Notes: a model not told the origin generated them from the letters alone. Counted from the stretch's first letter, positions 26-56,510 are shown. The stretch: DNA of 64,000 nucleotides from IMGVR_UViG_3300028862_000012:159866-223865; one strand, 5' to 3'. Numbers and translations: made by a program.

Positions 26-259
26 ATGAATAATAAAAGAATTTCTACTTTTGTAGATAACGAGTGGTATGCTTTTTATAGGGATGTTGATAAAGATTAC
101 ATTTGTAATCAAAGTATACTTACTATACTAGAACTATTTTACAACTACCTAAATGACAAGTCAGAGTATTGTAAAAAGCTCATGGACTACTACAATTTAA
201 TTTCAGATAAATATAAAGCTGACTATTGGAAAGAAAGATACGAAAAGGAAATAAAATGA
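26..259 (+). CDS. Hypothetical protein; codons 5-11 overlap a Cas12a repeat handle
   Basis: ORF track, 77 aa; ATGA overlap with next ORF. Confidence 0.7.
   Translation: MNNKRISTFVDNEWYAFYRDVDKDYICNQSILTILELFYNYLNDKSEYCKKLMDYYNLISDKYKADYWKERYEKEIK
40..58 (+). repeat. Solitary Cas12a (type V-A) repeat handle AATTTCTACTTTTGTAGAT
   Basis: Matches the conserved 19-nt 3' end of V-A repeats (AATT-TCTAC-loop-GTAGA-T); identical to the copy at 45912-45930 (-). Confidence 0.75.
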
Positions 260-10606: not shown

Positions 10607-10635
10607 TTGACATAAATCTATTATAGGTATATAAT
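10607..10635 (+). promoter_or_regulatory. Consensus sigma70-type promoter, probably leaderless for ORF 10642
   Basis: TTGACA-17-TATAAT; ATG 6 nt after the -10 box; no SD. Confidence 0.85.
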
Positions 10636-11124: not shown

Positions 11125-11398
11125 AAGAAACAGAAATTATAGAATTTAAAAATGATTCTTTAATTATTAAAGAAAACTTTTTAATAAACTCTAAATACAA
11201 AGATATTAAAGCACTGCGAGAGAAGACCAAAGATGAAGAGGATTATATGCCAGATACTAACGCTTTGTGCTTGCAGTAATGTTAGTATAAAGTGTGATCT
11301 TATACTGAACAGTGGAATTTATGTTAGAACGACAAACAACCGTGTACCGGCCTTGCGGCCACTACACGGATAATTTGCGGGAAGAAAAGGAGGGAAGA

Positions 11399-12226
11399 TT
11401 GACAGCATCAGAATTATTTTCTGGGAATAAACATAATCACGGCGATCACAACTGCTATTACTGTGGTGCATCGTGTGATGAACAATATAAAACCGCTGAT
11501 TACGTAAAAGATACGTTTACCAATCGCGATATTGTGAAATATCCACAGTCGCAATTTGTTTGTGTCGGCTGCGTTGAATCTCTAGGGAATGGCGAAGACA
11601 AAATGCCGTTCATCGACGGGACGGTGAAAGTCAGAGAGAACGCGCGTGGTATGTGCCCGCGAATGTATTCGTGGATTTTATTTACAGATCATAAGCTCGC
11701 CGGAACAAAGGCCCATATAAAAGAATGGCGCGAGCTTTTAGCCAATCCTCCCGAACCGCCATTTGCAGTAATCCTTGCAGATTCCGGGCAGAAGCAGTTG
11801 ATATTCCGTGCACCTATCGCAATGAGTAAAAAGTGTTTTTCAATTCTTCTTGAAGATGAATGTATCGAAGTAATTCCCGAACAGCTTGCAGAACGCCTTG
11901 AAATGTGTACACCGATTTGCGCGGCTCTTGGCAAACCTGCACTGCAGGGAGAAATCTCTTTTTCATCTTATACCCGATATAACGAATATCATGGTGAAAT
12001 TGAAACTCTTGAAAAATGGTTGGCCATTCGTGACCAGCCTTTGTCGCGCCTTGCGGCGTGGTTATCGCTATCAAAGGAGAATGCACAGAATGAGTATGCA
12101 AGTATTGAGTGCGGAAAAGTTCCGGCAGGAACTCGCGGGACTAGTGGACAAAAGCCGGACGATTCCAGAAATGGAACTCGGAGTAATCAAGGATCAGGCG
12201 GTCAGGTTCTGCTCGATCTTGGCTGA
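11399..12226 (+). CDS. csf1: Type IV CRISPR large subunit Csf1 (Cas8-like)
   Basis: Zn-finger CYYCGxxC...CVGC, QKQLIFRAP motif; probable TTG start at 11399 after AGGAGG (track start 11312); first gene of csf operon. Confidence 0.85.
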   Translation: MTASELFSGNKHNHGDHNCYYCGASCDEQYKTADYVKDTFTNRDIVKYPQSQFVCVGCVESLGNGEDKMPFIDGTVKVRENARGMCPRMYSWILFTDHKLAGTKAHIKEWRELLANPPEPPFAVILADSGQKQLIFRAPIAMSKKCFSILLEDECIEVIPEQLAERLEMCTPICAALGKPALQGEISFSSYTRYNEYHGEIETLEKWLAIRDQPLSRLAAWLSLSKENAQNEYASIECGKVPAGTRGTSGQKPDDSRNGTRSNQGSGGQVLLDLG

Positions 12227-12578
12227 GGTGTTCGGCGAAGACCTTGACCGGAAAACTTTATGGGAGCGTATCGGAAACGGCCTTATTGTCGCAGCTGCAA
12301 AATGCGGCGGCGACTGGGAGCTGTTCGTCAATGAGATGCTCAAATACATTAAGGCAGAACCGGGAAAAGTAGCGGCGAATCGCGGGCTTGCGGCTTTCAT
12401 CGACGAGATGCTTGTTCGCCCGAAAGAATGGCAAGAGCAGTTTGTCCGCGAATGCGAGGCAAAGCATATGTTCATTTGCGTCAAAGCGCGGATGCTCTGG
12501 AACTCACGAAAAACACCACAGGACAATCCCGATGCAGAAGATCGTTTGACCGGAGGTGCAGAAAATGGAACTAATTAA
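12090..12578 (+). CDS. cas11: Type IV small subunit (Cas11-like)
   Basis: Helical ~160 aa protein (DRKTLWERIGNGL) between csf1 and csf2; start chosen by RBS AGGAG at 12075. Confidence 0.7.
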   Translation: MSMQVLSAEKFRQELAGLVDKSRTIPEMELGVIKDQAVRFCSILAEVFGEDLDRKTLWERIGNGLIVAAAKCGGDWELFVNEMLKYIKAEPGKVAANRGLAAFIDEMLVRPKEWQEQFVRECEAKHMFICVKARMLWNSRKTPQDNPDAEDRLTGGAENGTN

Positions 12579-13521
12579 AAACTGCAAAATACATTGCCTT
12601 TCAACGGCATTATCTCCGATCACGCACATGATGGGAACCTCTGGGAATGAATCCGTCATCAACCGCGAATCAGTCCTGTTCAAAAATAAAATCAGACAGG
12701 TTCCGGTTCTGTCTGGCAACGCAATTCGTCACAAGATGATACGCGATCCAGGCGGCCTCTACCTTATCAAAGAGTGCGGACTTGTCGGGAAGCTGAACAT
12801 CGATCAAGCGAATTACCTACTGAATGGCGGTTCTCTGACAGAATCTTCGACAACGGAAAACCTTGGGCGTATTGCAGAAATGCAAACACTCATGCCGCTC
12901 ACCCGACTGCTCGGAGGATCACTACGAAATCAGGTTATCGGTGGATCTCTGTTTGTTCTTCGAGGGCTTTTGGTCTGCGAGGAAAACAGAAGCCAGATTC
13001 AGAAACAACTTCCAGAAGGCTACGAACTTCCTGAACAGGCATTGCGTTCGGCGGAAGATTTCATCGATCAATATCAGTACACCCGCGGAGATGCGCAAAA
13101 ACGGAACGACGCTGATCTTATGCTTGAAGAAAAATCCGATGACGTAAAATCAAATCTTATGATTTACAACGGACAGGATGTAATTCCCGGTTCTGTTTTC
13201 TATCATGGGTTCACCTTACAGAATATTTCACCGATCGAAGTAGGGGCATTGCTCCATTCGCTTATTCAGTGGGATGCAGCGGGCGGATTTATCGGAGGTC
13301 AATCACGCATAGGACATGGAAAACTCAAGATGTCGATTTTCTTCGAGGACGGAGACGACTTCATGGGAAATGAACTCAATCCGGCTGATATCGTGAAAAT
13401 GTATATCGACCACGTACACGCGAATGCAGAAAAAATTGCGCAATGGCTCGATGATACATTCCCGAACAAAGGGAAAAAAGCGGACGCGAAAAAACTTGCT
13501 GAAGGAGCGCTCGGCTTATGA
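12556..13521 (+). CDS. csf2: Type IV backbone subunit Csf2 (Cas7 RAMP)
   Basis: ALSPITH, VPVLSGNAIRH, LLGGS and Gly-loop IGGQSRIGHG motifs. Confidence 0.9.
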   Translation: MQKMELIKNCKIHCLSTALSPITHMMGTSGNESVINRESVLFKNKIRQVPVLSGNAIRHKMIRDPGGLYLIKECGLVGKLNIDQANYLLNGGSLTESSTTENLGRIAEMQTLMPLTRLLGGSLRNQVIGGSLFVLRGLLVCEENRSQIQKQLPEGYELPEQALRSAEDFIDQYQYTRGDAQKRNDADLMLEEKSDDVKSNLMIYNGQDVIPGSVFYHGFTLQNISPIEVGALLHSLIQWDAAGGFIGGQSRIGHGKLKMSIFFEDGDDFMGNELNPADIVKMYIDHVHANAEKIAQWLDDTFPNKGKKADAKKLAEGALGL

Positions 13522-14198
13522 TAAAGAACTGGAAAGTCACCGCATGGCTTTCCAGCCCTTTGGCTGGAGAACCCCCACAGTTTGACGCAATACTCGGATG
13601 GGAACTTGCGCGTCGGCTTGGGTATAAACATTGCCGAAAGCTTACAAGAGATACGCCGTTGAGCGATATTCAAAATCCGCCGATCCCACTTGCGCAGCGT
13701 ACTATTTCAGGCGTTGACGTGTTCTGCTGTTCAGCGCCGATACTTCCCGAGCCTCATGATGAATGGGTTGAGAGAATATCAAAGCGGATTGACACCGACG
13801 AAATAGCCTTGCTTCTTGCGCCTGAGTTCCGCAAGTCTCTGCTTGTAGCATCTGGCCCGTATAAGATGCGGTATGTTCCTGAGCGGATTCGCCTTATTGA
13901 TTGCGTATGCTGGTTTGTACGTGGAGATAGAAAAGAAATACACAAGCTAGTAAAATCAGTCTATGCGATTGGGAAGCATCGTAATATTGGGTATGGTCAG
14001 GTTGAAGATTGGACGTTTGAAGAAACTGAAGAAGATTATTCCATCTCTGCATTACGTCAAGGCAAGCCGGTGCTTATGAAAATAATTCCGTTCGGAAGCG
14101 AATGTCAAAATATGACTGGATACAAACATTCTTTCGGCGCGGCGAATATGCCGTATTGGCATCCGGAGAATTATCGGGAGATTGCTTCTCCATGTTGA
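13518..14198 (+). CDS. csf3: Type IV Csf3 (Cas5 RAMP)
   Basis: VTAWLSSPLAG N-terminus, IGKHRNIGYG Gly-loop, C-terminal PYWHP. Confidence 0.85.
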   Translation: MIKNWKVTAWLSSPLAGEPPQFDAILGWELARRLGYKHCRKLTRDTPLSDIQNPPIPLAQRTISGVDVFCCSAPILPEPHDEWVERISKRIDTDEIALLLAPEFRKSLLVASGPYKMRYVPERIRLIDCVCWFVRGDRKEIHKLVKSVYAIGKHRNIGYGQVEDWTFEETEEDYSISALRQGKPVLMKIIPFGSECQNMTGYKHSFGAANMPYWHPENYREIASPC

Positions 14199-14479
14199 TT
14201 GACAAGAAGATAATATTTAGAGCCGGGACGGATACGAAAGAATTATATTTATGTGTTGCGGCTCTAAATAAATATCTTGTAGAAAACGAGATAAGATCAA
14301 ACGATAGAGAACGGACATACAACGTCCACAACAACACGAAAGAAATATACATACGTGAGAGAAGTAAAAGTATTTTTGTGAGGTATAAAAAATTAAAAGA
14401 ACCGAAAGCGCGAGCGCGAAAAGATAAACAGTTAACGAGAGAAACTACAAACAGTACATATGGAGATGGTAGGTGTTAA
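14192..14479 (+). CDS. Small basic hypothetical protein inside the IV-B operon
   Basis: ATG overlaps the csf3 stop; overlaps cysH start (track 14102..14479). Confidence 0.5.
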   Translation: MLIDKKIIFRAGTDTKELYLCVAALNKYLVENEIRSNDRERTYNVHNNTKEIYIRERSKSIFVRYKKLKEPKARARKDKQLTRETTNSTYGDGRC

Positions 14480-15168
14480 TAATAACAGATCGTCATACAG
14501 AAAAAGATTTGAAACTTTGGAAAGAGTATAAGGAGATTGATAAAATATCAACATACTCTGAAAAGAAAATAGAGCTTGCAAAAAAATCTATCAATGAGTT
14601 TTCATGTAAACATATTGATACTGTTATATATACGTCATGGGGAAAGGATTCGATTATTCTTCTTCATCTTGTCGCGCTAATGGAATTAAAATATCCGGTT
14701 GTATATGTACGTTTTAATGACCGCGATAATCCAGATTGTGAATTAGTTCGCGATGCGTTTCTGAAGAAATACAATATTGATTATCACGAGGAATATTTTG
14801 ATTATAAACGCGTTCGTGCAAAAGATTTGCACTGGAAAGAAACGGCTAATAAATATGGGCATCATAGAATTACCGGAATAAGAAACGATGAATCAGGGCG
14901 TCGATTATTGAACTGGAAAAAATACGGCTTCTTTTCAGAAAATACTTGTCGCCCATTATCATTGCTTACAAACAAAGAAGTATTCGCATATATTTATCAT
15001 AATGATTTACCGCTATGCCCTGTATATGGATACCTCGGAGGTGGAAGATGGCCACGTGAAAACATACGAACTCATTCACTCGCAGGTTCAAGTGCGGATG
15101 GTTTCGGACGAACGGAATGGGAGTTCGAATATTATCCTGATATTTTGAACAGAATTAAGAGTTTCTAA
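14473..15168 (+). CDS. cysH: CysH-like (PAPS reductase family) protein, type IV-B accessory gene
   Basis: PP-loop SWGKDS, TGIRNDES..R, RPL...EVFAYI..NDLPLCPVY. Confidence 0.85.
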   Translation: MLIITDRHTEKDLKLWKEYKEIDKISTYSEKKIELAKKSINEFSCKHIDTVIYTSWGKDSIILLHLVALMELKYPVVYVRFNDRDNPDCELVRDAFLKKYNIDYHEEYFDYKRVRAKDLHWKETANKYGHHRITGIRNDESGRRLLNWKKYGFFSENTCRPLSLLTNKEVFAYIYHNDLPLCPVYGYLGGGRWPRENIRTHSLAGSSADGFGRTEWEFEYYPDILNRIKSF

Positions 15169-15221
15169 TAACTGGTTCCACCTGACAATCTTGCGGATTG
15201 CAGGTGAACCAAGTGTTAGGT
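15163..15221 (+). other. attC-like recombination site (59 bp)
   Basis: Inverse core TTCTAAT containing the cysH stop; core GTTAGGT; imperfect palindrome with two extrahelical bases (top C and A = bottom G and T) and an unpaired central spacer. Confidence 0.8.
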
Positions 15222-15227
15222 TGACGC

Positions 15228-15265
15228 TCAATCCATATAGCGCCAGTAGCTGCTATATGGATTGA
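15228..15265 (+). terminator. 14-bp perfect hairpin, probable terminator of the IV-B operon
   Basis: TCAATCCATATAGC / GCTATATGGATTGA. Confidence 0.6.
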
Positions 15266-15318
15266 CCGCAAAAAAGAGCGAAAAAGTGCATTTTTCTGCC
15301 TTTTTTTACATTATTTAG

Positions 15319-15347
15319 TTGACATAATATCTTGATTGTAGTATGCT
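15319..15347 (+). promoter_or_regulatory. sigma70-type promoter of cassette 2
   Basis: TTGACA-17-TATGCT with upstream A/T tracts. Confidence 0.8.
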
Positions 15348-15419
15348 TTAATCAAGGTTGATAGTTAAGGCAACCAAATCTAAACGACCTACGGGCTGGT
15401 CAGTAAACCCGAAAAACAA

Positions 15420-15692
15420 ATGAAGCACGGAAAACTTACCAGAGAACAGGCTATCGAAATCGCAGGATCAGAGATCGTCAAAAAGCTCGATTATGTTAAC
15501 TGCGAACCCACAAGCCGGTTACAGTGCGACGGCGACGACTCAACCGAGTACACCGCATCACTCAAGACCGCCAACGGCGAAACGCTTATTGCCTACTACT
15601 ACACAACACCCGAGCAAGAGCAGACAATTGCAGACGCAGACGCAGATGGTTCGGCGATAGACTGGGAAATCAACGGATACGAGGTTATTTGA
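15420..15692 (+). CDS. Small acidic hypothetical protein (anti-defence candidate)
   Basis: 90 aa, Asp/Glu-rich, first gene after a strong promoter. Confidence 0.7.
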   Translation: MKHGKLTREQAIEIAGSEIVKKLDYVNCEPTSRLQCDGDDSTEYTASLKTANGETLIAYYYTTPEQEQTIADADADGSAIDWEINGYEVI

Positions 15693-15874
15693 TGCAACAC
15701 GGCGGCAAGCGAAATGGGGCGGGCCGCCGCCCTATTTTTGAAAAAACAAAGCTGACCCAAATACGGGTAAATCAGGAAATCTGGGACGCTATCCCGGCAC
15801 CAAAAGCGGCATGGGTTAGGGAAGCGATTGAAGAAAAAGCGAAAAAAAAGAACCTAACAACTGCCTTAACCTGA
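15692..15874 (+). CDS. Small DNA-binding protein (GGxRxGAGR motif plus ribbon-helix-helix-like)
   Basis: HGGKRNGAGRRP, TQIRVNQEIWD, WVREAIEEK; ATG overlaps the previous TGA. Confidence 0.65.
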   Translation: MQHGGKRNGAGRRPIFEKTKLTQIRVNQEIWDAIPAPKAAWVREAIEEKAKKKNLTTALT

Positions 15875-15878
15875 TGTT
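15851..15878 (+). other. Truncated attC relic
   Basis: ACCTAACAACTGCCTTAACCTGA resembles the left arm of the 15163 site (CCTGA); right arm missing, followed by GTT. Confidence 0.5.
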
Positions 15879-15902
15879 AATTTAGAAGACGATTTAAAAG
15901 AT

Positions 15903-35950: not shown

Positions 35951-35970
35951 ATTGTTTACCTCACTTAATT

Positions 35971-36058
35971 ATCATATCATTATTTTACTTTGCTGTCAAA
36001 TAAAAAACGTATAGTTTAGTAAATATTTTTTAATAAATACTAAAGCTACTTTAGTTAA
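35971..36058 (-). promoter_or_regulatory. Early promoter with conserved upstream block, copy A
   Basis: TTGACA(35994-35999)-17-TATGAT plus ~60 bp similar to copies B and C. Confidence 0.8.
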
Positions 36059-36059
36059 A

Positions 36060-36665
36060 CTAAAGATGATACAGATCAGTCATGCAAGCCCAATAGTTTT
36101 CTGCTATTTTATGTGATTGCATAGCTTTATAGCCATCAGTATTATTAGCTATATGATGCTCCGCTATATAACTAAACTTAACCTTTTGATTTTGATTGGC
36201 ACTAATCAATTGTGAGTAGGCTATTTCGACATCTTTAGGCTTAAAGCTGTATAGATCATTATGGCTTTTGAAGCGCATGTCTTCTTTTCCGTTCTTGCAT
36301 AAGAATAGTCCAAAGCCAGCTTCATCCTTAAATAAAACAGACTCTTGATCAAACTTTTTTCCTAAATATAGGATATCTCCAAAATCTATATTAGGAATAA
36401 AAAAGCTTTTTTCTTCCCGTATTCCTAATTCACCAGTATCTATATCTTTATAACTATATCCTGAACGCTGTTCAATGTAGCCATAGTGAAGACCTCTGAT
36501 AGTTTTTCGTAATTCTTCATGCCTTTCTAGGTTTTGTTCTTCTGAAAAAAGATCCTGTCTATATGCAGAAACTACTCCAAAGGTAGTATTGGGATTATTT
36601 ATGTGTTGCCAGACTCGGCTTAAACTTGATTCTATTAATCGGATGTTTCCTTCATTGATGCTCAT
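36060..36665 (-). CDS. Hypothetical phage protein
   Basis: 201 aa; TAACTATT motif and GGAG RBS upstream. Confidence 0.7.
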   Translation of the reverse strand: MSINEGNIRLIESSLSRVWQHINNPNTTFGVVSAYRQDLFSEEQNLERHEELRKTIRGLHYGYIEQRSGYSYKDIDTGELGIREEKSFFIPNIDFGDILYLGKKFDQESVLFKDEAGFGLFLCKNGKEDMRFKSHNDLYSFKPKDVEIAYSQLISANQNQKVKFSYIAEHHIANNTDGYKAMQSHKIAENYWACMTDLYHL

Positions 36666-36706
36666 AATTATTACTCCTTTCTAATAGTTAGATCAGCTGT
36701 ATAGTA

Positions 36707-36797
36707 AGCATACATTTTATTTACTTTAATGTCAATTAAAAAAGTGCTATTTTAGTAATTATTTTTTAACATATACTTAACTATCTTTAGTATAGTT
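36707..36797 (-). promoter_or_regulatory. Early promoter with conserved upstream block, copy B
   Basis: TTGACA(36730-36735)-17-TATGCT. Confidence 0.8.
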
Positions 36798-36863
36798 AAA
36801 GTTAAAAAGAGGTATTCTATGGAAGAAAAATGCATTTATTTTATAAAAAAGTAATATATTTAC

Positions 36864-45070: not shown

Positions 45071-45847
45071 CTATTTTCCACCATTAATTTTTTCATCCAA
45101 TTGCTGAACCTGAATAGTAAGTACTTCAATCTTATGAATCAGCTTATTTTTCTTTTCCTCAAGTTCTTCTATTTCCTCAAGCTCTTCCATTGGTTCTTTA
45201 ATAATCTGTTTTACCTGATCAATAGTTTTTCCTTGCTGAAGCAAAATAAGTGCCTTTTGTGCTTTATCCAGATCAGAAGTAAGTGCTACAAAAGTTTTAG
45301 CATCAGAACTAATATCATTAGGAATACCCCGAGTAGCAATCTTAACAGTCTTTTTTACTGTTGTTCGCTTAATTCCAATAGTACGATCTGTAATATCTTC
45401 ATATCGTACATTTTCTTCTTTGCAGATAGTCTGTACTTCAATCAGTGCTGTACCCATTTCAGAAGTAAGCTTACTAATTTGTACATCCAGTTCTTTTACC
45501 TTATCAATTTTAGCTTTCAAGTTGTCAGAGATAACTACAGTGTAAAATCCGAGTTTTTCGGCTTTAGTAATTAGATCATAAAAGGTAGACCAAAAGAAAC
45601 TGGTATGTCCTTCCTTACGATTATTTTCTGCATACACTACATGATGAGCTAGTTCATGCAGTGCTGTAAAAAAGAGCAGATTATTGTCATCATTGAAATT
45701 TCGGTTATTTAATAGTATTTCTTTTGTTGCAGGTAAATATTTACCATTTACATTTTTAGATTTCTTTCCAGTAAAAATACAAGTATATTCATTTACGCAA
45801 TGATATACCTTATCCAGATTTTCTTTAACATCATTTTGATTCCACAT
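45071..45847 (-). CDS. SprT-like zinc metalloprotease with C-terminal coiled coil
   Basis: NGKY, TALHELAHH (HExxH), GHTSFFW. Confidence 0.75.
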   Translation of the reverse strand: MWNQNDVKENLDKVYHCVNEYTCIFTGKKSKNVNGKYLPATKEILLNNRNFNDDNNLLFFTALHELAHHVVYAENNRKEGHTSFFWSTFYDLITKAEKLGFYTVVISDNLKAKIDKVKELDVQISKLTSEMGTALIEVQTICKEENVRYEDITDRTIGIKRTTVKKTVKIATRGIPNDISSDAKTFVALTSDLDKAQKALILLQQGKTIDQVKQIIKEPMEELEEIEELEEKKNKLIHKIEVLTIQVQQLDEKINGGK

Positions 45848-45859
45848 ATAACATCCTTT

Positions 45860-45946
45860 ATCTACATAAGTAGAAATTTTAATTTTCTAAATACTCGCAA
45901 GAAATCAATTCATCTACAAAAGTAGAAATTTAAAACCTTCTAAAAT
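45860..45946 (-). CRISPR. Two-repeat Cas12a-type (V-A) mini-array / crRNA mimic
   Basis: Repeats ATTTTAGAAGGTTTTAAATTTCTACTTTTGTAGAT (45946-45912) and GTATTTAGAAAATTAAAATTTCTACTTATGTAGAT (45894-45860), 35 nt each, separated by a 17-nt spacer; no cas12a in window. Confidence 0.8.
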
Positions 45947-45969
45947 ATTTCTTTATAAGAAATTTACTA

Positions 45970-46430: not shown

Positions 46431-47705
46431 TTACATAAACTCCTTTTCCATACGATGTTCTAAGCTATCAAAAGTAGATGATTTTAATATATTAATTGCT
46501 TTTTCTTTACTTGTATACAGGTTATTTAATTGATTCATGTACAGTGTATTTAATATATTTTTAAACTCTGGACAAGGTTTATAACCAAGTTCTATTAAAG
46601 TATCACCGGTAATAAAAGGAGCAGGAAGGTTAGTATAATTACTGGCAATTTGCTTATTGAAATTATACAAGCTTATATCATAAATAAACTTTTCATTATC
46701 AGAAATCATTACATCACAGACAATAAGCATATCATCAAAAAAATTAGATGCTTTTAAAGTTCGGGTTGTGGCTAAATCAATATGACTATATAATTTTTTA
46801 TAATTACTAATTATATTACAAATGTATTCTATGTCATCATTACTAAATCGTAAAGTACTTAACTCTTCTTTTACTATATCTGTATCCATATTGATAAACA
46901 TCAAACTCAAATATACTTTGTAATTTACTTTATATTTATCAGCACGGAGCAGTCTATCGATCAACAGATTAAGTGTATAGGCATCAGTTACTTCATGCTT
47001 ATACAAGGCAGGGTATATAACATTACATAAATCTTTATAGCCAGTCAATACTTTCATAAAATCACCTACCTTTGACATCAATATTTTTTCAGTAAGTTCT
47101 TTACTGATTCTATCTTTGGCAACATGATTATTAAATTCTGACGAAAAGCTATTTATAAAATCAGGTGAGTAATTAGAGATATATCCATGTACTTGGAAGC
47201 GAATAAAACGCAATAGTCTAAGATAATCTTCTTTAATACGCTCTTCTGGATTTCCTACAAATCGCAATACTTTATTTTCTATATCGCGAACTCCATTAAC
47301 ATAGTCATAGTACTGATTAGTTATAGGATTATAAAACAAGGCATTAATAGTAAAGTCTCGACGCTGTGCATCTTCTTCTATTGAAGCTAATTCCATATGA
47401 TCAAAATGGCGACCGTCACAACCGATTTCTTTTCTAAAACAAGCCAGCTCGAAAGTAAAGTTATTCTTTGATACTAATAGTACTTCAAATGATTTACCTA
47501 CAGATTTACCTACAGATTTCACTATATAGCCGTAATGAGCAAGGATTGGAATACTAATATTAGTTAAGCAATCTGTTGCTATATCTATGTCATTACATGG
47601 TTTATTAGCCAAGGTATCCCGAACATAGCCGCCTGCAAAAACAGCTATATGATTTTCTGATTGGAGGCATTTACATATATCAATAGCTGTTTCTAATTCT
47701 GTCAT
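46431..47705 (-). CDS. cca: CCA-adding tRNA nucleotidyltransferase (class II)
   Basis: AGGYVRD, DIDIAT, RRDFTINAL, EDYLRLLRFIRF; poly(A) polymerase not excluded. Confidence 0.85.
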   Translation of the reverse strand: MTELETAIDICKCLQSENHIAVFAGGYVRDTLANKPCNDIDIATDCLTNISIPILAHYGYIVKSVGKSVGKSFEVLLVSKNNFTFELACFRKEIGCDGRHFDHMELASIEEDAQRRDFTINALFYNPITNQYYDYVNGVRDIENKVLRFVGNPEERIKEDYLRLLRFIRFQVHGYISNYSPDFINSFSSEFNNHVAKDRISKELTEKILMSKVGDFMKVLTGYKDLCNVIYPALYKHEVTDAYTLNLLIDRLLRADKYKVNYKVYLSLMFINMDTDIVKEELSTLRFSNDDIEYICNIISNYKKLYSHIDLATTRTLKASNFFDDMLIVCDVMISDNEKFIYDISLYNFNKQIASNYTNLPAPFITGDTLIELGYKPCPEFKNILNTLYMNQLNNLYTSKEKAINILKSSTFDSLEHRMEKEFM

Positions 47706-56332: not shown

Positions 56333-56358
56333 TTATTCCCCCCCCATCTGATATAGTA

Positions 56359-56450
56359 ATTCTACCACTTAATTACTTTACTGTCAACTAAAAAAGTGGT
56401 ATTTTAGTAATTATTTTTTAATAAATACTTCAGCTACTTTAGTATAATTT
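56359..56450 (-). promoter_or_regulatory. Early promoter with conserved upstream block, copy C
   Basis: TTGACA(56382-56387)-17-TAGAAT. Confidence 0.8.
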
Positions 56451-56510
56451 AAGACACTTTTACATATAATGTCATAATAAATATCGCTTTTTTTTATTAA
56501 AAAAAATACC

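What the first reader, a model, noticed from the sequence alone, without database searches (positions are those of the whole stretch)
11399..15168. Array-less type IV-B system with CysH in a phage that also carries foreign CRISPR repeats
Seen: csf1, cas11, csf2, csf3, a small ORF and cysH-like gene, with no cas6/csf5, dinG, cas1/2 or array nearby. Known: IV-B loci occur on mobile elements, lack arrays, and their RNA partner and function are unresolved. Inference: here it may sequester host guides or act with the CysH-like enzyme as counter-defence; the V-A-type repeats elsewhere in the window are candidate ligands or a parallel anti-CRISPR layer.
Basis: partly seen in the sequence, partly recalled or inferred. 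Interest (0 to 1): 0.65.

Follow-up and report, generated by a model that had tools for sequence, protein, structure and literature searches.

The report
Freshly acquired array-less type IV-B cassette
A 224-kb peat phage carries a complete CRISPR type IV-B gene set with its usual CysH-like enzyme and no repeat array, copied almost letter for letter from another mobile element in the same peat; it is a new example of a known but still unexplained system.

Summary
Window 11399-15168 encodes csf1, cas11, csf2, csf3, a 95-aa gene and a CysH-like PP-loop enzyme. All are intact. The whole 223,865-bp virus record has no Cas1, Cas2, Cas6/Csy4, DinG, Cas12a or CRISPR array. This is a textbook type IV-B locus.

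New here: the cassette is the only GC-rich island in the phage (44% against 29%). It consists of two segments, 99.95% and 99.5% identical to a 46%-GC peat contig, rearranged and joined at a TGTTAG hexamer. An independent assembly reproduces the phage context. Other peat samples hold the donor context, with contigs breaking at exactly these points.

Relatives (Csf2 47-87% identical) lie almost always in phages or prophages, match their hosts' GC, and are under purifying selection. The place after csf3 varies: CysH-like in most loci, radical-SAM enzymes instead in three, SpoU or GNAT enzymes added in others.

Those repeats are real Cas12a handles, but they lie 11 and 30 kb away in native phage DNA, and none of 26 related or same-cassette loci scanned has one.

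My preferred mechanism, at about 0.3, is a guide-independent RNA filament working with an ATP-dependent modifying enzyme. It is inferred, not shown.

The parts
11280..15847 (+). Foreign GC-rich island. Segment A is 11321-15219 and segment B is 15214-15847. Positions 11286-11320 look like a diverged copy of the donor's stretch upstream of segment B.
   Evidence: GC is 44-53% against 29% in the flanks, and this is the only such island in 224 kb. A is 99.95% identical to L147:2672-6570 and B is 99.5% identical to L147:1706-2338. Contigs in other peat runs break at 11321, 15214, 15219 and 15847. TGTTAG stands at the joints.
10607..10635 (+). Phage sigma-70-type promoter (TTGACA-17-TATAAT, 12 of 12) that probably drives read-through into csf1.
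   Evidence: No convincing terminator lies between it and 11399. Its use is inferred.
11399..12226 (+). csf1, the type IV large subunit, 275 aa, TTG start, with five invariant zinc-finger-type cysteines.
   Evidence: PDLC01574 2.5e-74; TIGR03114 8.5e-14; RBS and start; invariant C19, C22, C26, C55, C58.
12090..12578 (+). cas11, the small subunit, about 160 aa, overlapping the 3' end of csf1. The start is 12090 or 12096.
   Evidence: PDLC01570 1.1e-40 and PDLC01573 3.1e-34; start candidates.
12565..13521 (+). csf2 (Cas7), 318 aa from the ATG at 12565. An alternative GTG start lies at 12556.
   Evidence: PDLC01572 1.1e-95. 458 homologues by word search. The family profile hits the IV-B Csf2 structure 7JHY at 1.6e-7. 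dN/dS is 0.05 against L002.
13518..14198 (+). csf3 (Cas5), 226 aa.
   Evidence: PDLC01727 2.8e-38; dN/dS 0.03.
14192..14479 (+). Small gene, 95 aa. The model has a beta-alpha-beta3 core and a basic disordered tail. It fills the variable place that holds a winged-helix protein in most related loci.
   Evidence: Homologues at 82-83% identity, and L007:9000-9308 at 39%. AF2 pLDDT 75. No fold or family match.
14473..15168 (+). cysH-like gene (CasCysH), 231 aa. It has an invariant SWGKDS PP-loop, no invariant cysteine, and a conserved N-terminal MLIxxDRHTxxDLxxWxxYEExD segment.
   Evidence: PF01507 4.8e-10; phrog_2302 1.7e-19; motifs. AF2 pLDDT 86. Nearest folds are the FAD synthase PAPS-like domain, CysD, PAPS reductase, TilS and TtuA. 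dN/dS 0.05.
15174..15307 (+). Structured spacer: hairpin 1 (15174-15210, end of segment A), hairpin 2 (15224-15269, start of segment B) and a U-tract terminator-like hairpin (15270-15307).
   Evidence: RNA fold z-score -5.6. The two hairpins are not adjacent in the donor.
15319..15874 (+). Promoter-like site (15319-15347) and two small donor genes: o90 (15420-15692) and o60 (15692-15874). The last 9 codons of o60 come from phage DNA beyond the joint.
   Evidence: In the donor the second gene is 69 aa. No family match beyond weak PHROG hits.
40..58 (+). Solitary V-A repeat handle AATTTCTACTTTTGTAGAT, inside codons 5-11 of a 77-aa ORF (26-259). It is not part of the IV-B island.
45856..45950 (-). 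V-A mini-array: two handles (one with a T-to-A change) flanking one spacer of at most 32 nt, in the 5' leader of a 258-aa HExxH gene (45071-45847). It is not part of the IV-B island.
   Evidence: No target was found.

Best explanation
This is a genuine, intact type IV-B CRISPR-Cas effector module: Csf1, Cas11, Csf2, Csf3, a small basic protein and the signature CysH-like PP-loop enzyme. A virulent-looking 224-kb peat phage picked it up very recently from a roughly 46%-GC mobile element, probably a temperate phage, living in the same peat. The import arrived as two donor segments joined at a TGTTAG hexamer, and it is probably transcribed by read-through from a phage early-type promoter. The identity, the absences and the transfer are shown (confidence at least 0.95). 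The mechanism is inferred, at about 0.3. As in the one solved IV-B complex, Csf2 and Cas11 would form a filament on RNA without a cognate crRNA, capped by Csf3 and Csf1. The filament would serve as a platform for the linked enzyme. CasCysH would use ATP to adenylate and so activate or modify the bound nucleic acid or a partner molecule. The result would help the carrier phage in conflicts with host defences or rival elements. It would not act by sequence-specific interference or by soaking up host crRNAs.
For: Identity: HMM hits to all four Csf/Cas11 genes and to PAPS_reduct. Csf1 cysteines are invariant. The Csf2 profile reaches the IV-B structure 7JHY. Absences hold across the whole record. 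Transfer: the island is the only GC anomaly. It is 99.95% and 99.5% identical to L147 in rearranged order. The same phage-plus-island arrangement stands in a second assembly at 99.994% over 16,957 bp. Donor-context contigs in other peat runs break at exactly 11321, 15214, 15219 and 15847. Function is retained in phages: 17 IMG/VR loci plus L004, L006, L007 and L008 lie in phage or prophage settings with polymerase, RecA, integrase, terminase or portal genes. Their cassette GC tracks flank GC from 26 to 58%. dN/dS is 0.03-0.11. Enzyme platform: the PP-loop SWGKDS is invariant and no cysteine is invariant. The fold belongs with ATP pyrophosphatases and adenylyltransferases. The place after csf3 holds other nucleic-acid-type modifying enzymes: radical SAM/B12 instead of CysH in L130, L132 and L133, SpoU in L135, L137 and L138, and GNAT plus PAPS_reduct/DUF3440 in L142. 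The CysH-to-radical-SAM swap happened at least twice on the Csf2 tree. Literature: the IV-B complex assembles on heterogeneous non-CRISPR RNA (PMC7937560), and CasCysH is predicted to be an ATP alpha-hydrolase lacking the catalytic cysteine (PMC8175902).
Against: There is no biochemical evidence for any substrate of CasCysH, and no target is known. A BMC Biology review calls the CysH-like protein an inactivated reductase derivative (PMC11656645), so its role could be structural. Co-folding Csf1, Csf3 and CysH gave no answer, which counts neither way. In this particular phage the cassette is too recent for selection to have tested it. The heterogeneous RNA seen in the solved complex could be an artefact of expression in a foreign host (PMC8175902). 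The enzymes in the variable place could be unrelated neighbouring cargo.
Confidence: 0.4

Rival explanations
1. The module is an inter-element competition or superinfection-exclusion device. The Csf complex loads RNAs and blocks replication or transcription of rival phages or plasmids, as type IV-A does, and CysH is an accessory.
For: Type IV-A systems act in plasmid competition (PMC7038947, PMC11519345). [quoted passage not shown] Most relatives sit in temperate phages with integrases. The cassette is under purifying selection.
Against: There is no array, Cas6 or helicase in the record. No mini-array lies beside any of the related cassettes; only L005 has an array, and there it abuts a degraded cassette remnant. 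This reading does not explain the swapping of enzymes in the variable place.
Confidence: 0.2
2. The module is an anti-CRISPR sponge or hijacker. The array-less complex would sequester or reuse host crRNAs, possibly the V-A-type RNAs encoded elsewhere in the phage.
For: It is carried by a phage, has no array of its own, and shares the genome with V-A handles. Pinilla-Redondo et al. reported negative co-occurrence of IV-B with several type I and II-C systems and raised the idea of crRNA borrowing (PMC7038947).
Against: The purified IV-B complex did not take up co-expressed I-E crRNAs (PMC7937560). None of 26 related or same-cassette loci scanned has a V-A handle. The island is a recent import, while the V-A repeats lie in native phage DNA 11 and 30 kb away. 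V-A crRNA handles are built for Cas12a (general knowledge). The strict enzyme linkage is left unexplained.
Confidence: 0.12
3. The cassette is a passenger. It has only just landed in this phage by illegitimate recombination and does nothing useful there, whatever it does in its donor.
For: It is 99.95% identical to the donor and its GC has not shifted towards the phage's. The last small gene is clipped by the joint. No close relatives of the phage were found that could show retention.
Against: All six genes are intact. The phage-plus-island form appears in a second assembly, and phage flanks plus island pieces appear in another sample. AT-rich phages such as L003, L004 and L135 keep GC-matched copies, so the module is kept in such genomes.
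Confidence: 0.15
4. The island is an assembly chimera. It belongs to another organism and was mis-joined into the phage contig.
For: There is a sharp GC jump, and the same sequence also exists in another context in the same habitat.
Against: The island is flanked by phage DNA on both sides. An ENA assembly with a different contig-naming style gives the same 16,957 bp with one mismatch. A Logan contig of 45 kb spans the whole stretch.
Confidence: 0.02

Closest known systems
Type IV-B CRISPR-Cas of the Mycobacterium sp. JS623 plasmid (PDB 7JHY; PMC7937560)
   Same: It has the same gene set (csf1, cas11, csf2, csf3, cysH-like), no array, Cas6, helicase or adaptation genes, and sits on a mobile element. 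The Csf2 profile of the window's clade reaches 7JHY Csf2 at 1.6e-7.
   Different: The sequences are only distantly related (33.7 bits). This one is phage-borne rather than plasmid-borne and has an extra 95-aa gene between csf3 and cysH. RNA binding has not been tested here.
Fuxivirus (Bathyarchaeia virus) type IV-B with a CysH-like gene (PMC10848311)
   Same: It is a virus-encoded IV-B effector module with an adjacent CysH-like gene and no adaptation module.
   Different: Fuxivirus has a two-repeat mini-array inside the locus and an archaeal host. Here no repeat lies in or next to the island, and the only mini-array in the window is of V-A type, 30 kb away.
Type IV-A CRISPR-Cas (DinG, Csf5/Cas6, array; PMC7038947, PMC11519345)
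   Same: It shares the Csf1, Csf2 and Csf3 core, and PADLOC's best-scoring models for these genes carry CAS-IV-A labels.
   Different: No DinG, Cas6 or array is present, while Cas11 and CysH-like are present. This is therefore not IV-A.
RNA anti-CRISPRs: Racr solitary repeats and Cracr regulatory RNAs (PMC10651486; bioRxiv 10.1101/2024.10.29.618823). This comparison is for the V-A repeats only.
   Same: They are phage-encoded copies of a host-type repeat with no cognate cas gene in the phage. The 19-nt handle is identical to that of real V-A arrays.
   Different: No own promoter or terminator was detected by the simple scan. One copy lies inside an ORF. The host and target are unknown.

Membership tests
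Type IV-B CRISPR-Cas | Csf1 large subunit present | tested here: met
   PDLC01574 2.5e-74 and TIGR03114 8.5e-14; invariant cysteine cluster.
Type IV-B CRISPR-Cas | Csf2 (Cas7) and Csf3 (Cas5) present | tested here: met
   1.1e-95 and 2.8e-38; profile hit to 7JHY Csf2.
Type IV-B CRISPR-Cas | Cas11 small subunit present | tested here: met
   PDLC01570 1.1e-40.
Type IV-B CRISPR-Cas | Adjacent cysH-like gene with a PP-loop and without the catalytic cysteine of true PAPS reductases | tested here: met
   PF01507 4.8e-10. SWGKDS is invariant and no cysteine is invariant in 14-15 homologues. The fold matches adenine nucleotide alpha-hydrolases.
Type IV-B CRISPR-Cas | No DinG or RecD-type helicase in the locus | tested here: met
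   TIGR03117 finds nothing in the 224-kb record. Every ORF of the island is accounted for. RecD was not searched as a family.
Type IV-B CRISPR-Cas | No Cas6/Csf5 and no CRISPR array | tested here: met
   Cas6_C gives only a 15-bit sub-threshold hit in an unrelated ORF. Csy4 gives none. TRF, repeat and k-mer scans find no array. Caveats: no Csf5-specific model was available, and the record is 91% complete.
Type IV-B CRISPR-Cas | No adaptation module (Cas1, Cas2) | tested here: met
   with positive controls.
Type IV-B CRISPR-Cas | The complex assembles on non-CRISPR RNA | not testable with these tools
   Known only for the JS623 complex (PMC7937560).
Racr / Cracr RNA anti-CRISPR (V-A repeats) | The repeat mimics that of a host CRISPR type while the phage lacks the cognate Cas | tested here: met
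   The exact 19-mer stands in more than 120 genome contigs with V-A arrays. L014 has a Cas12a of 654 bits beside such an array. The phage has no Cas12a.
Racr / Cracr RNA anti-CRISPR (V-A repeats) | A stand-alone transcription unit (own promoter and terminator) | tested here: inconclusive
   The consensus scan found none on the minus strand. By eye there is a TTGACT-15-TATACT upstream. One copy lies inside an ORF.
Racr / Cracr RNA anti-CRISPR (V-A repeats) | Inhibits Cas12a, or pairs with a cas promoter | not testable with these tools
   The host is unknown. No spacer target was found in the loci held or in viral contigs.

The most novel reading that the evidence does not exclude
Phage-borne type IV-B modules may be guide-independent RNA-filament platforms with interchangeable enzymatic heads: a PP-loop CysH-like enzyme, radical SAM/B12 enzymes, SpoU methylase or GNAT. 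On this reading a CRISPR effector has been turned into a nucleic-acid modification machine used in phage-host or phage-phage conflict. This peat phage and its 99.95% identical donor would then offer a natural pair of backgrounds in which to test it.
Probability: 0.2. Interest if true: 0.8.

Novelty: new member of a known kind. Interest (0 to 1): 0.45.

Why it matters
Type IV-B is the one widespread CRISPR-Cas subtype with no known function (PMC8175902, PMC11656645). This locus does not solve that. It offers three things.

- It is a compact, intact cassette of about 3.8 kb from a phage clade under strong purifying selection, so it is suitable for expression and pull-down.
- It is a dated transfer event in which the same cassette exists in two mobile-element backgrounds in one habitat.
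- It gives a comparative lead: the linked enzyme has been exchanged at least twice for radical-SAM enzymes. That points to enzymatic modification rather than RNA-guided interference as the conserved logic.

The finding also shows that the co-resident V-A repeats are an independent feature. That removes an attractive but unsupported link between the two.

Tried and rejected
- **Co-folding.** Csf1, Csf3 and CysH-like, each with a 14-row alignment, gave no answer (score 0.00). This is evidence neither for nor against binding.
- **The 95-aa protein.** Pfam, PHROGs, NCBIfam and PADLOC found nothing. The Atlas search was uninformative. The AF2 model had no PDB match at E <= 0.001.
- **Possible Cas6 elsewhere.** The 15-bit Cas6_C hit at genome 104,518-104,715 lies in a 249-aa ORF with no Pfam family and no glycine-rich motif. 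I treat it as noise.
- **Possible array elsewhere.** The 81-bp-period repeat at genome 61,561-61,890 shares 29-48 nt per unit, and two of its 'spacers' are partly identical. It looks like a tandem coding-type repeat rather than a CRISPR array, but I did not check it for an ORF.
- **Target of the V-A spacer.** It has no exact match in viral contigs. No PAM-flanked seed of 12 nt or more occurs in the 144 loci held. The single 10-nt hit, in L029, lies inside an ORF and is taken as chance.
- **Hairpins after cysH as an RNA partner.** The two hairpins come from different donor segments and are not adjacent in the donor, so they are not a CRISPR-like unit.
- **Relatives of the phage.** Megablast against INPHARED and a protein scan with the neighbouring phosphoesterase found none, so no empty-site relative could be examined.
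- **RNA genes.** Rfam and tRNA scans of the window found nothing.
- **Large profile search.** Not used, because no claim rested on the absence of relatives.


Full report
**What the window is.** The window is the last 64 kb (159,866-223,865) of a 223,865-bp IMG/VR virus record that CheckV rates 91% complete. It carries phage genes: a tail fibre, a terminase-like protein, clamp loader, UvsX-like recombinase, thymidylate synthase and tRNA nucleotidyltransferase. The genome is 26-34% GC in every 4-kb bin except one, the bin that holds the finding (43%). At finer scale, window 11,400-15,900 reaches 44-53% GC, with a dip to 33-36% over the small ORF and cysH.

**The observation.** PADLOC models hit Csf1 (2.5e-74), Cas11 (1.1e-40), Csf2 (1.1e-95) and Csf3 (2.8e-38). 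NCBIfam's type IV models agree below their equivalog cut-offs. The last gene carries Pfam PAPS_reduct at 4.8e-10. cas11 most likely starts at 12090 or 12096 and overlaps the end of csf1, as it does in related loci.

The small ORF is a real gene, 14192-14479, 95 aa. It has 82-83% identical relatives and a 39% identical one in the same position in L007.

Across the whole record I found no Cas1, Cas2, Csf4/DinG, Csy4 or Cas12a. Cas6_C gave only a 15-bit hit in an unrelated ORF, and there is no array. Two caveats apply: no Csf5-specific model was available, and about 9% of the genome may be missing. The locus meets every testable defining feature of subtype IV-B as the literature describes it (PMC7038947, PMC8175902).

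**Where it came from.** The identical Csf2 protein stands on seven contigs. One is an independent ENA assembly of 155.6 kb with the same phage genes on both sides, 99.994% identical over 16,957 bp. Two others (L147, 7.2 kb, 46% GC; and L148) show the cassette in a different, GC-rich context.

Window 11321-15219 (segment A, csf1 to just past cysH) is 99.95% identical to L147:2672-6570. Window 15214-15847 (segment B, two small genes with their promoter-like site) is 99.5% identical to L147:1706-2338. In the donor the order is B, then 333 bp, then A. In the phage it is A then B, overlapping by the hexamer TGTTAG.

I laid Logan contigs of four peat metagenome runs on the stretch. The probable source run gave one 45-kb contig spanning everything. 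Two runs from other samples and studies gave contigs that stop, with unlike sequence beyond, at exactly 11321, 15214, 15219 and 15847, which is the donor context. A fourth run holds phage flanks as well as island pieces.

The island is therefore real, recent, and imported from a co-resident element. The direction follows from composition: the island matches the donor's GC, not the phage's. The last nine codons of the second small gene come from phage DNA, so that gene was clipped by the insertion.

TGTTAG also stands at 11280, right after the stop of the last phage ORF, at the start of A, and inverted 7 nt beyond the right joint. The 11-mer GTGATCTTATA occurs once in the phage, 17 nt before A's TGTTAG, and once in the donor, 17 nt before B's TGTTAG. 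I read this as cassette shuffling at short repeats. The mechanism is open.

**The family it belongs to.** The word search gave 458 Csf2 homologues, nearly all unnamed metagenome proteins. The long contigs I opened are phage or prophage settings:

- L004: DNA polymerase A, RecA and clamp loader, 26% GC.
- L006: integrase and RusA.
- L007: terminase and portal.
- L008: a Rectinemataceae MAG with integrase through to terminase.

A profile scan of IMG/VR gave 17 loci. The order csf1-cas11-csf2-csf3-[variable place]-cysH is conserved. In several loci where the neighbourhood could be read, the cassette lies a few kb upstream of the packaging genes.

In these loci the cassette GC is mostly within about 0.06 of flank GC, over a range of 26-58%. 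The window is an outlier at +0.146, and L131 is another at -0.13. Against L002 (79% nucleotide identity), dN/dS is 0.11, 0.05, 0.03 and 0.05 for csf1, csf2, csf3 and cysH. This clade of IV-B is therefore a long-standing, selected phage module. The literature has IV-B mainly on actinobacterial plasmids, 'sometimes prophages' (PMC7038947), 'some phages and prophages' (PMC11656645) and one archaeal virus family (PMC10848311). The huge-phage survey I could read does not mention type IV.

**The variable place and the enzyme.** Between csf3 and cysH, most loci have a small winged-helix-type protein, with weak HTH_11 and related hits. The window and L007 have the unrelated 95-aa basic protein instead. 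L135, L137 and L138 add a SpoU methylase there (3e-8). L142 adds a GNAT plus a PAPS_reduct/DUF3440 protein, and L004 has the latter after cysH. L130, L132 and L133 have radical-SAM or B12-binding enzymes and no cysH within 4.5-5 kb. On a Csf2 tree the radical-SAM loci fall in two separate, well-supported clades among CysH loci (98/95 and 100/99), so the exchange happened at least twice.

The CysH-like proteins share an invariant SWGKDS PP-loop, no invariant cysteine, and a conserved N-terminal segment. The AF2 model (pLDDT 86) is nearest to the FAD synthase PAPS-like domain, CysD, PAPS reductases, TilS and TtuA, with TM-scores of 0.5-0.58. This agrees with the published prediction of an ATP alpha-hydrolase that cannot do sulphonucleotide reduction (PMC8175902).

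**How it most likely works.** What is shown: the parts, their integrity, their selection in phages, and the enzyme class. What is inferred: that the Csf filament forms on RNA without a guide, as in 7JHY (PMC7937560), and acts as a platform for an ATP-dependent modifying enzyme whose product benefits the phage. I give this about 0.3. Competition or exclusion gets 0.2, crRNA sponging 0.12, and a functionless passenger in this particular phage 0.15. Expression by read-through from the perfect sigma-70-type promoter at 10607-10635 is also inferred.

**The V-A repeats.** AATTTCTACTTTTGTAGAT occurs at window 40-58, and twice (one copy with T to A) at 45856-45930 on the minus strand, 52 nt apart. The exact 19-mer is the 3' handle of V-A arrays in many Patescibacteria, Succinivibrionaceae, Campylobacteraceae and other MAGs, one of them beside a 654-bit Cas12a. 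The phage has no Cas12a.

These are therefore host-type repeats of the kind described as mini-arrays, Racrs or Cracrs (PMC10651486; bioRxiv 10.1101/2024.10.29.618823). They are unrelated to the island. They lie in AT-rich native DNA, and none of the 26 related or same-cassette loci scanned has such a handle. I found no target for the spacer.

**Verdict.** This is a new member of a known kind, with a well-documented recent transfer and a comparative lead on interchangeable accessory enzymes.

Noticed in passing
window 40-58 (+) and 45856-45950 (-): There are three copies of the Cas12a (V-A) repeat handle in a phage that has no Cas12a. One lies inside the first codons of a 77-aa ORF. The other two form a one-spacer mini-array in the leader of a 258-aa HExxH gene. 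They could be Racr or Cracr decoys or a host-Cas12a-borrowing guide. No target was found.
   Followed up: partly
L130:7833-9074, L132:7227-8576, L133:7618-10250, L135:8083-8484, L138:8125-8538, L142:7492-10465, L004:12378-14355: In related phage IV-B loci the place after csf3 holds radical SAM/B12 enzymes instead of CysH (three loci, at least two independent swaps). Other loci hold extra SpoU methylase, GNAT, or PAPS_reduct/DUF3440 genes. A search of the held literature for IV-B, Csf1 and radical SAM together found no paper.
   Followed up: partly
window 11280-11327, 15214-15219, 15854-15859; L147:1678-1711: The hexamer TGTTAG, or its complement, stands at or within 7 nt of every joint of the island. 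A GTGATCTTATA-N17-TGTTAG motif, unique in the 224-kb genome, is shared with the donor's segment-B upstream region. This suggests cassette shuffling at short repeats by an unknown recombination route.
   Followed up: partly
L005:10001-11713: A 76% identical csf2 with a frameshifted, truncated csf3 directly abuts a CRISPR array (repeat containing GTTTCAATCCACGC, about 66-nt period) next to cas2, cas1 and cas4 on the other strand. It is either a decaying IV-B remnant beside a host CRISPR locus or an assembly artefact: the contig also repeats a 6.7-kb integrase-primase unit.
   Followed up: no
window 15160-15420: The non-coding stretch after cysH is unusually structured (z = -5.6). It has two long hairpins from different donor segments and a U-tract terminator-like hairpin, followed by a TTGACA-17-TATGCT promoter-like site.
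   Followed up: partly
genome 61,561-61,890 (outside the window): There are four tandem units with an 81-bp period, each sharing a 29-48-nt AT-rich core. It was not treated as a CRISPR array and was not examined further.
   Followed up: no
window 35964-36065, 36700-36801, 56352-56453: There are three copies of a 102-nt direct repeat (71-81% identity), two of them 736 nt apart and the third 20 kb away.
   Followed up: no
window 46431-47705 (-): A tRNA nucleotidyltransferase gene (PHROG 4.8e-47) lies directly upstream, in transcription order, of the V-A mini-array. No tRNA gene was found in the 64-kb window.
   Followed up: no
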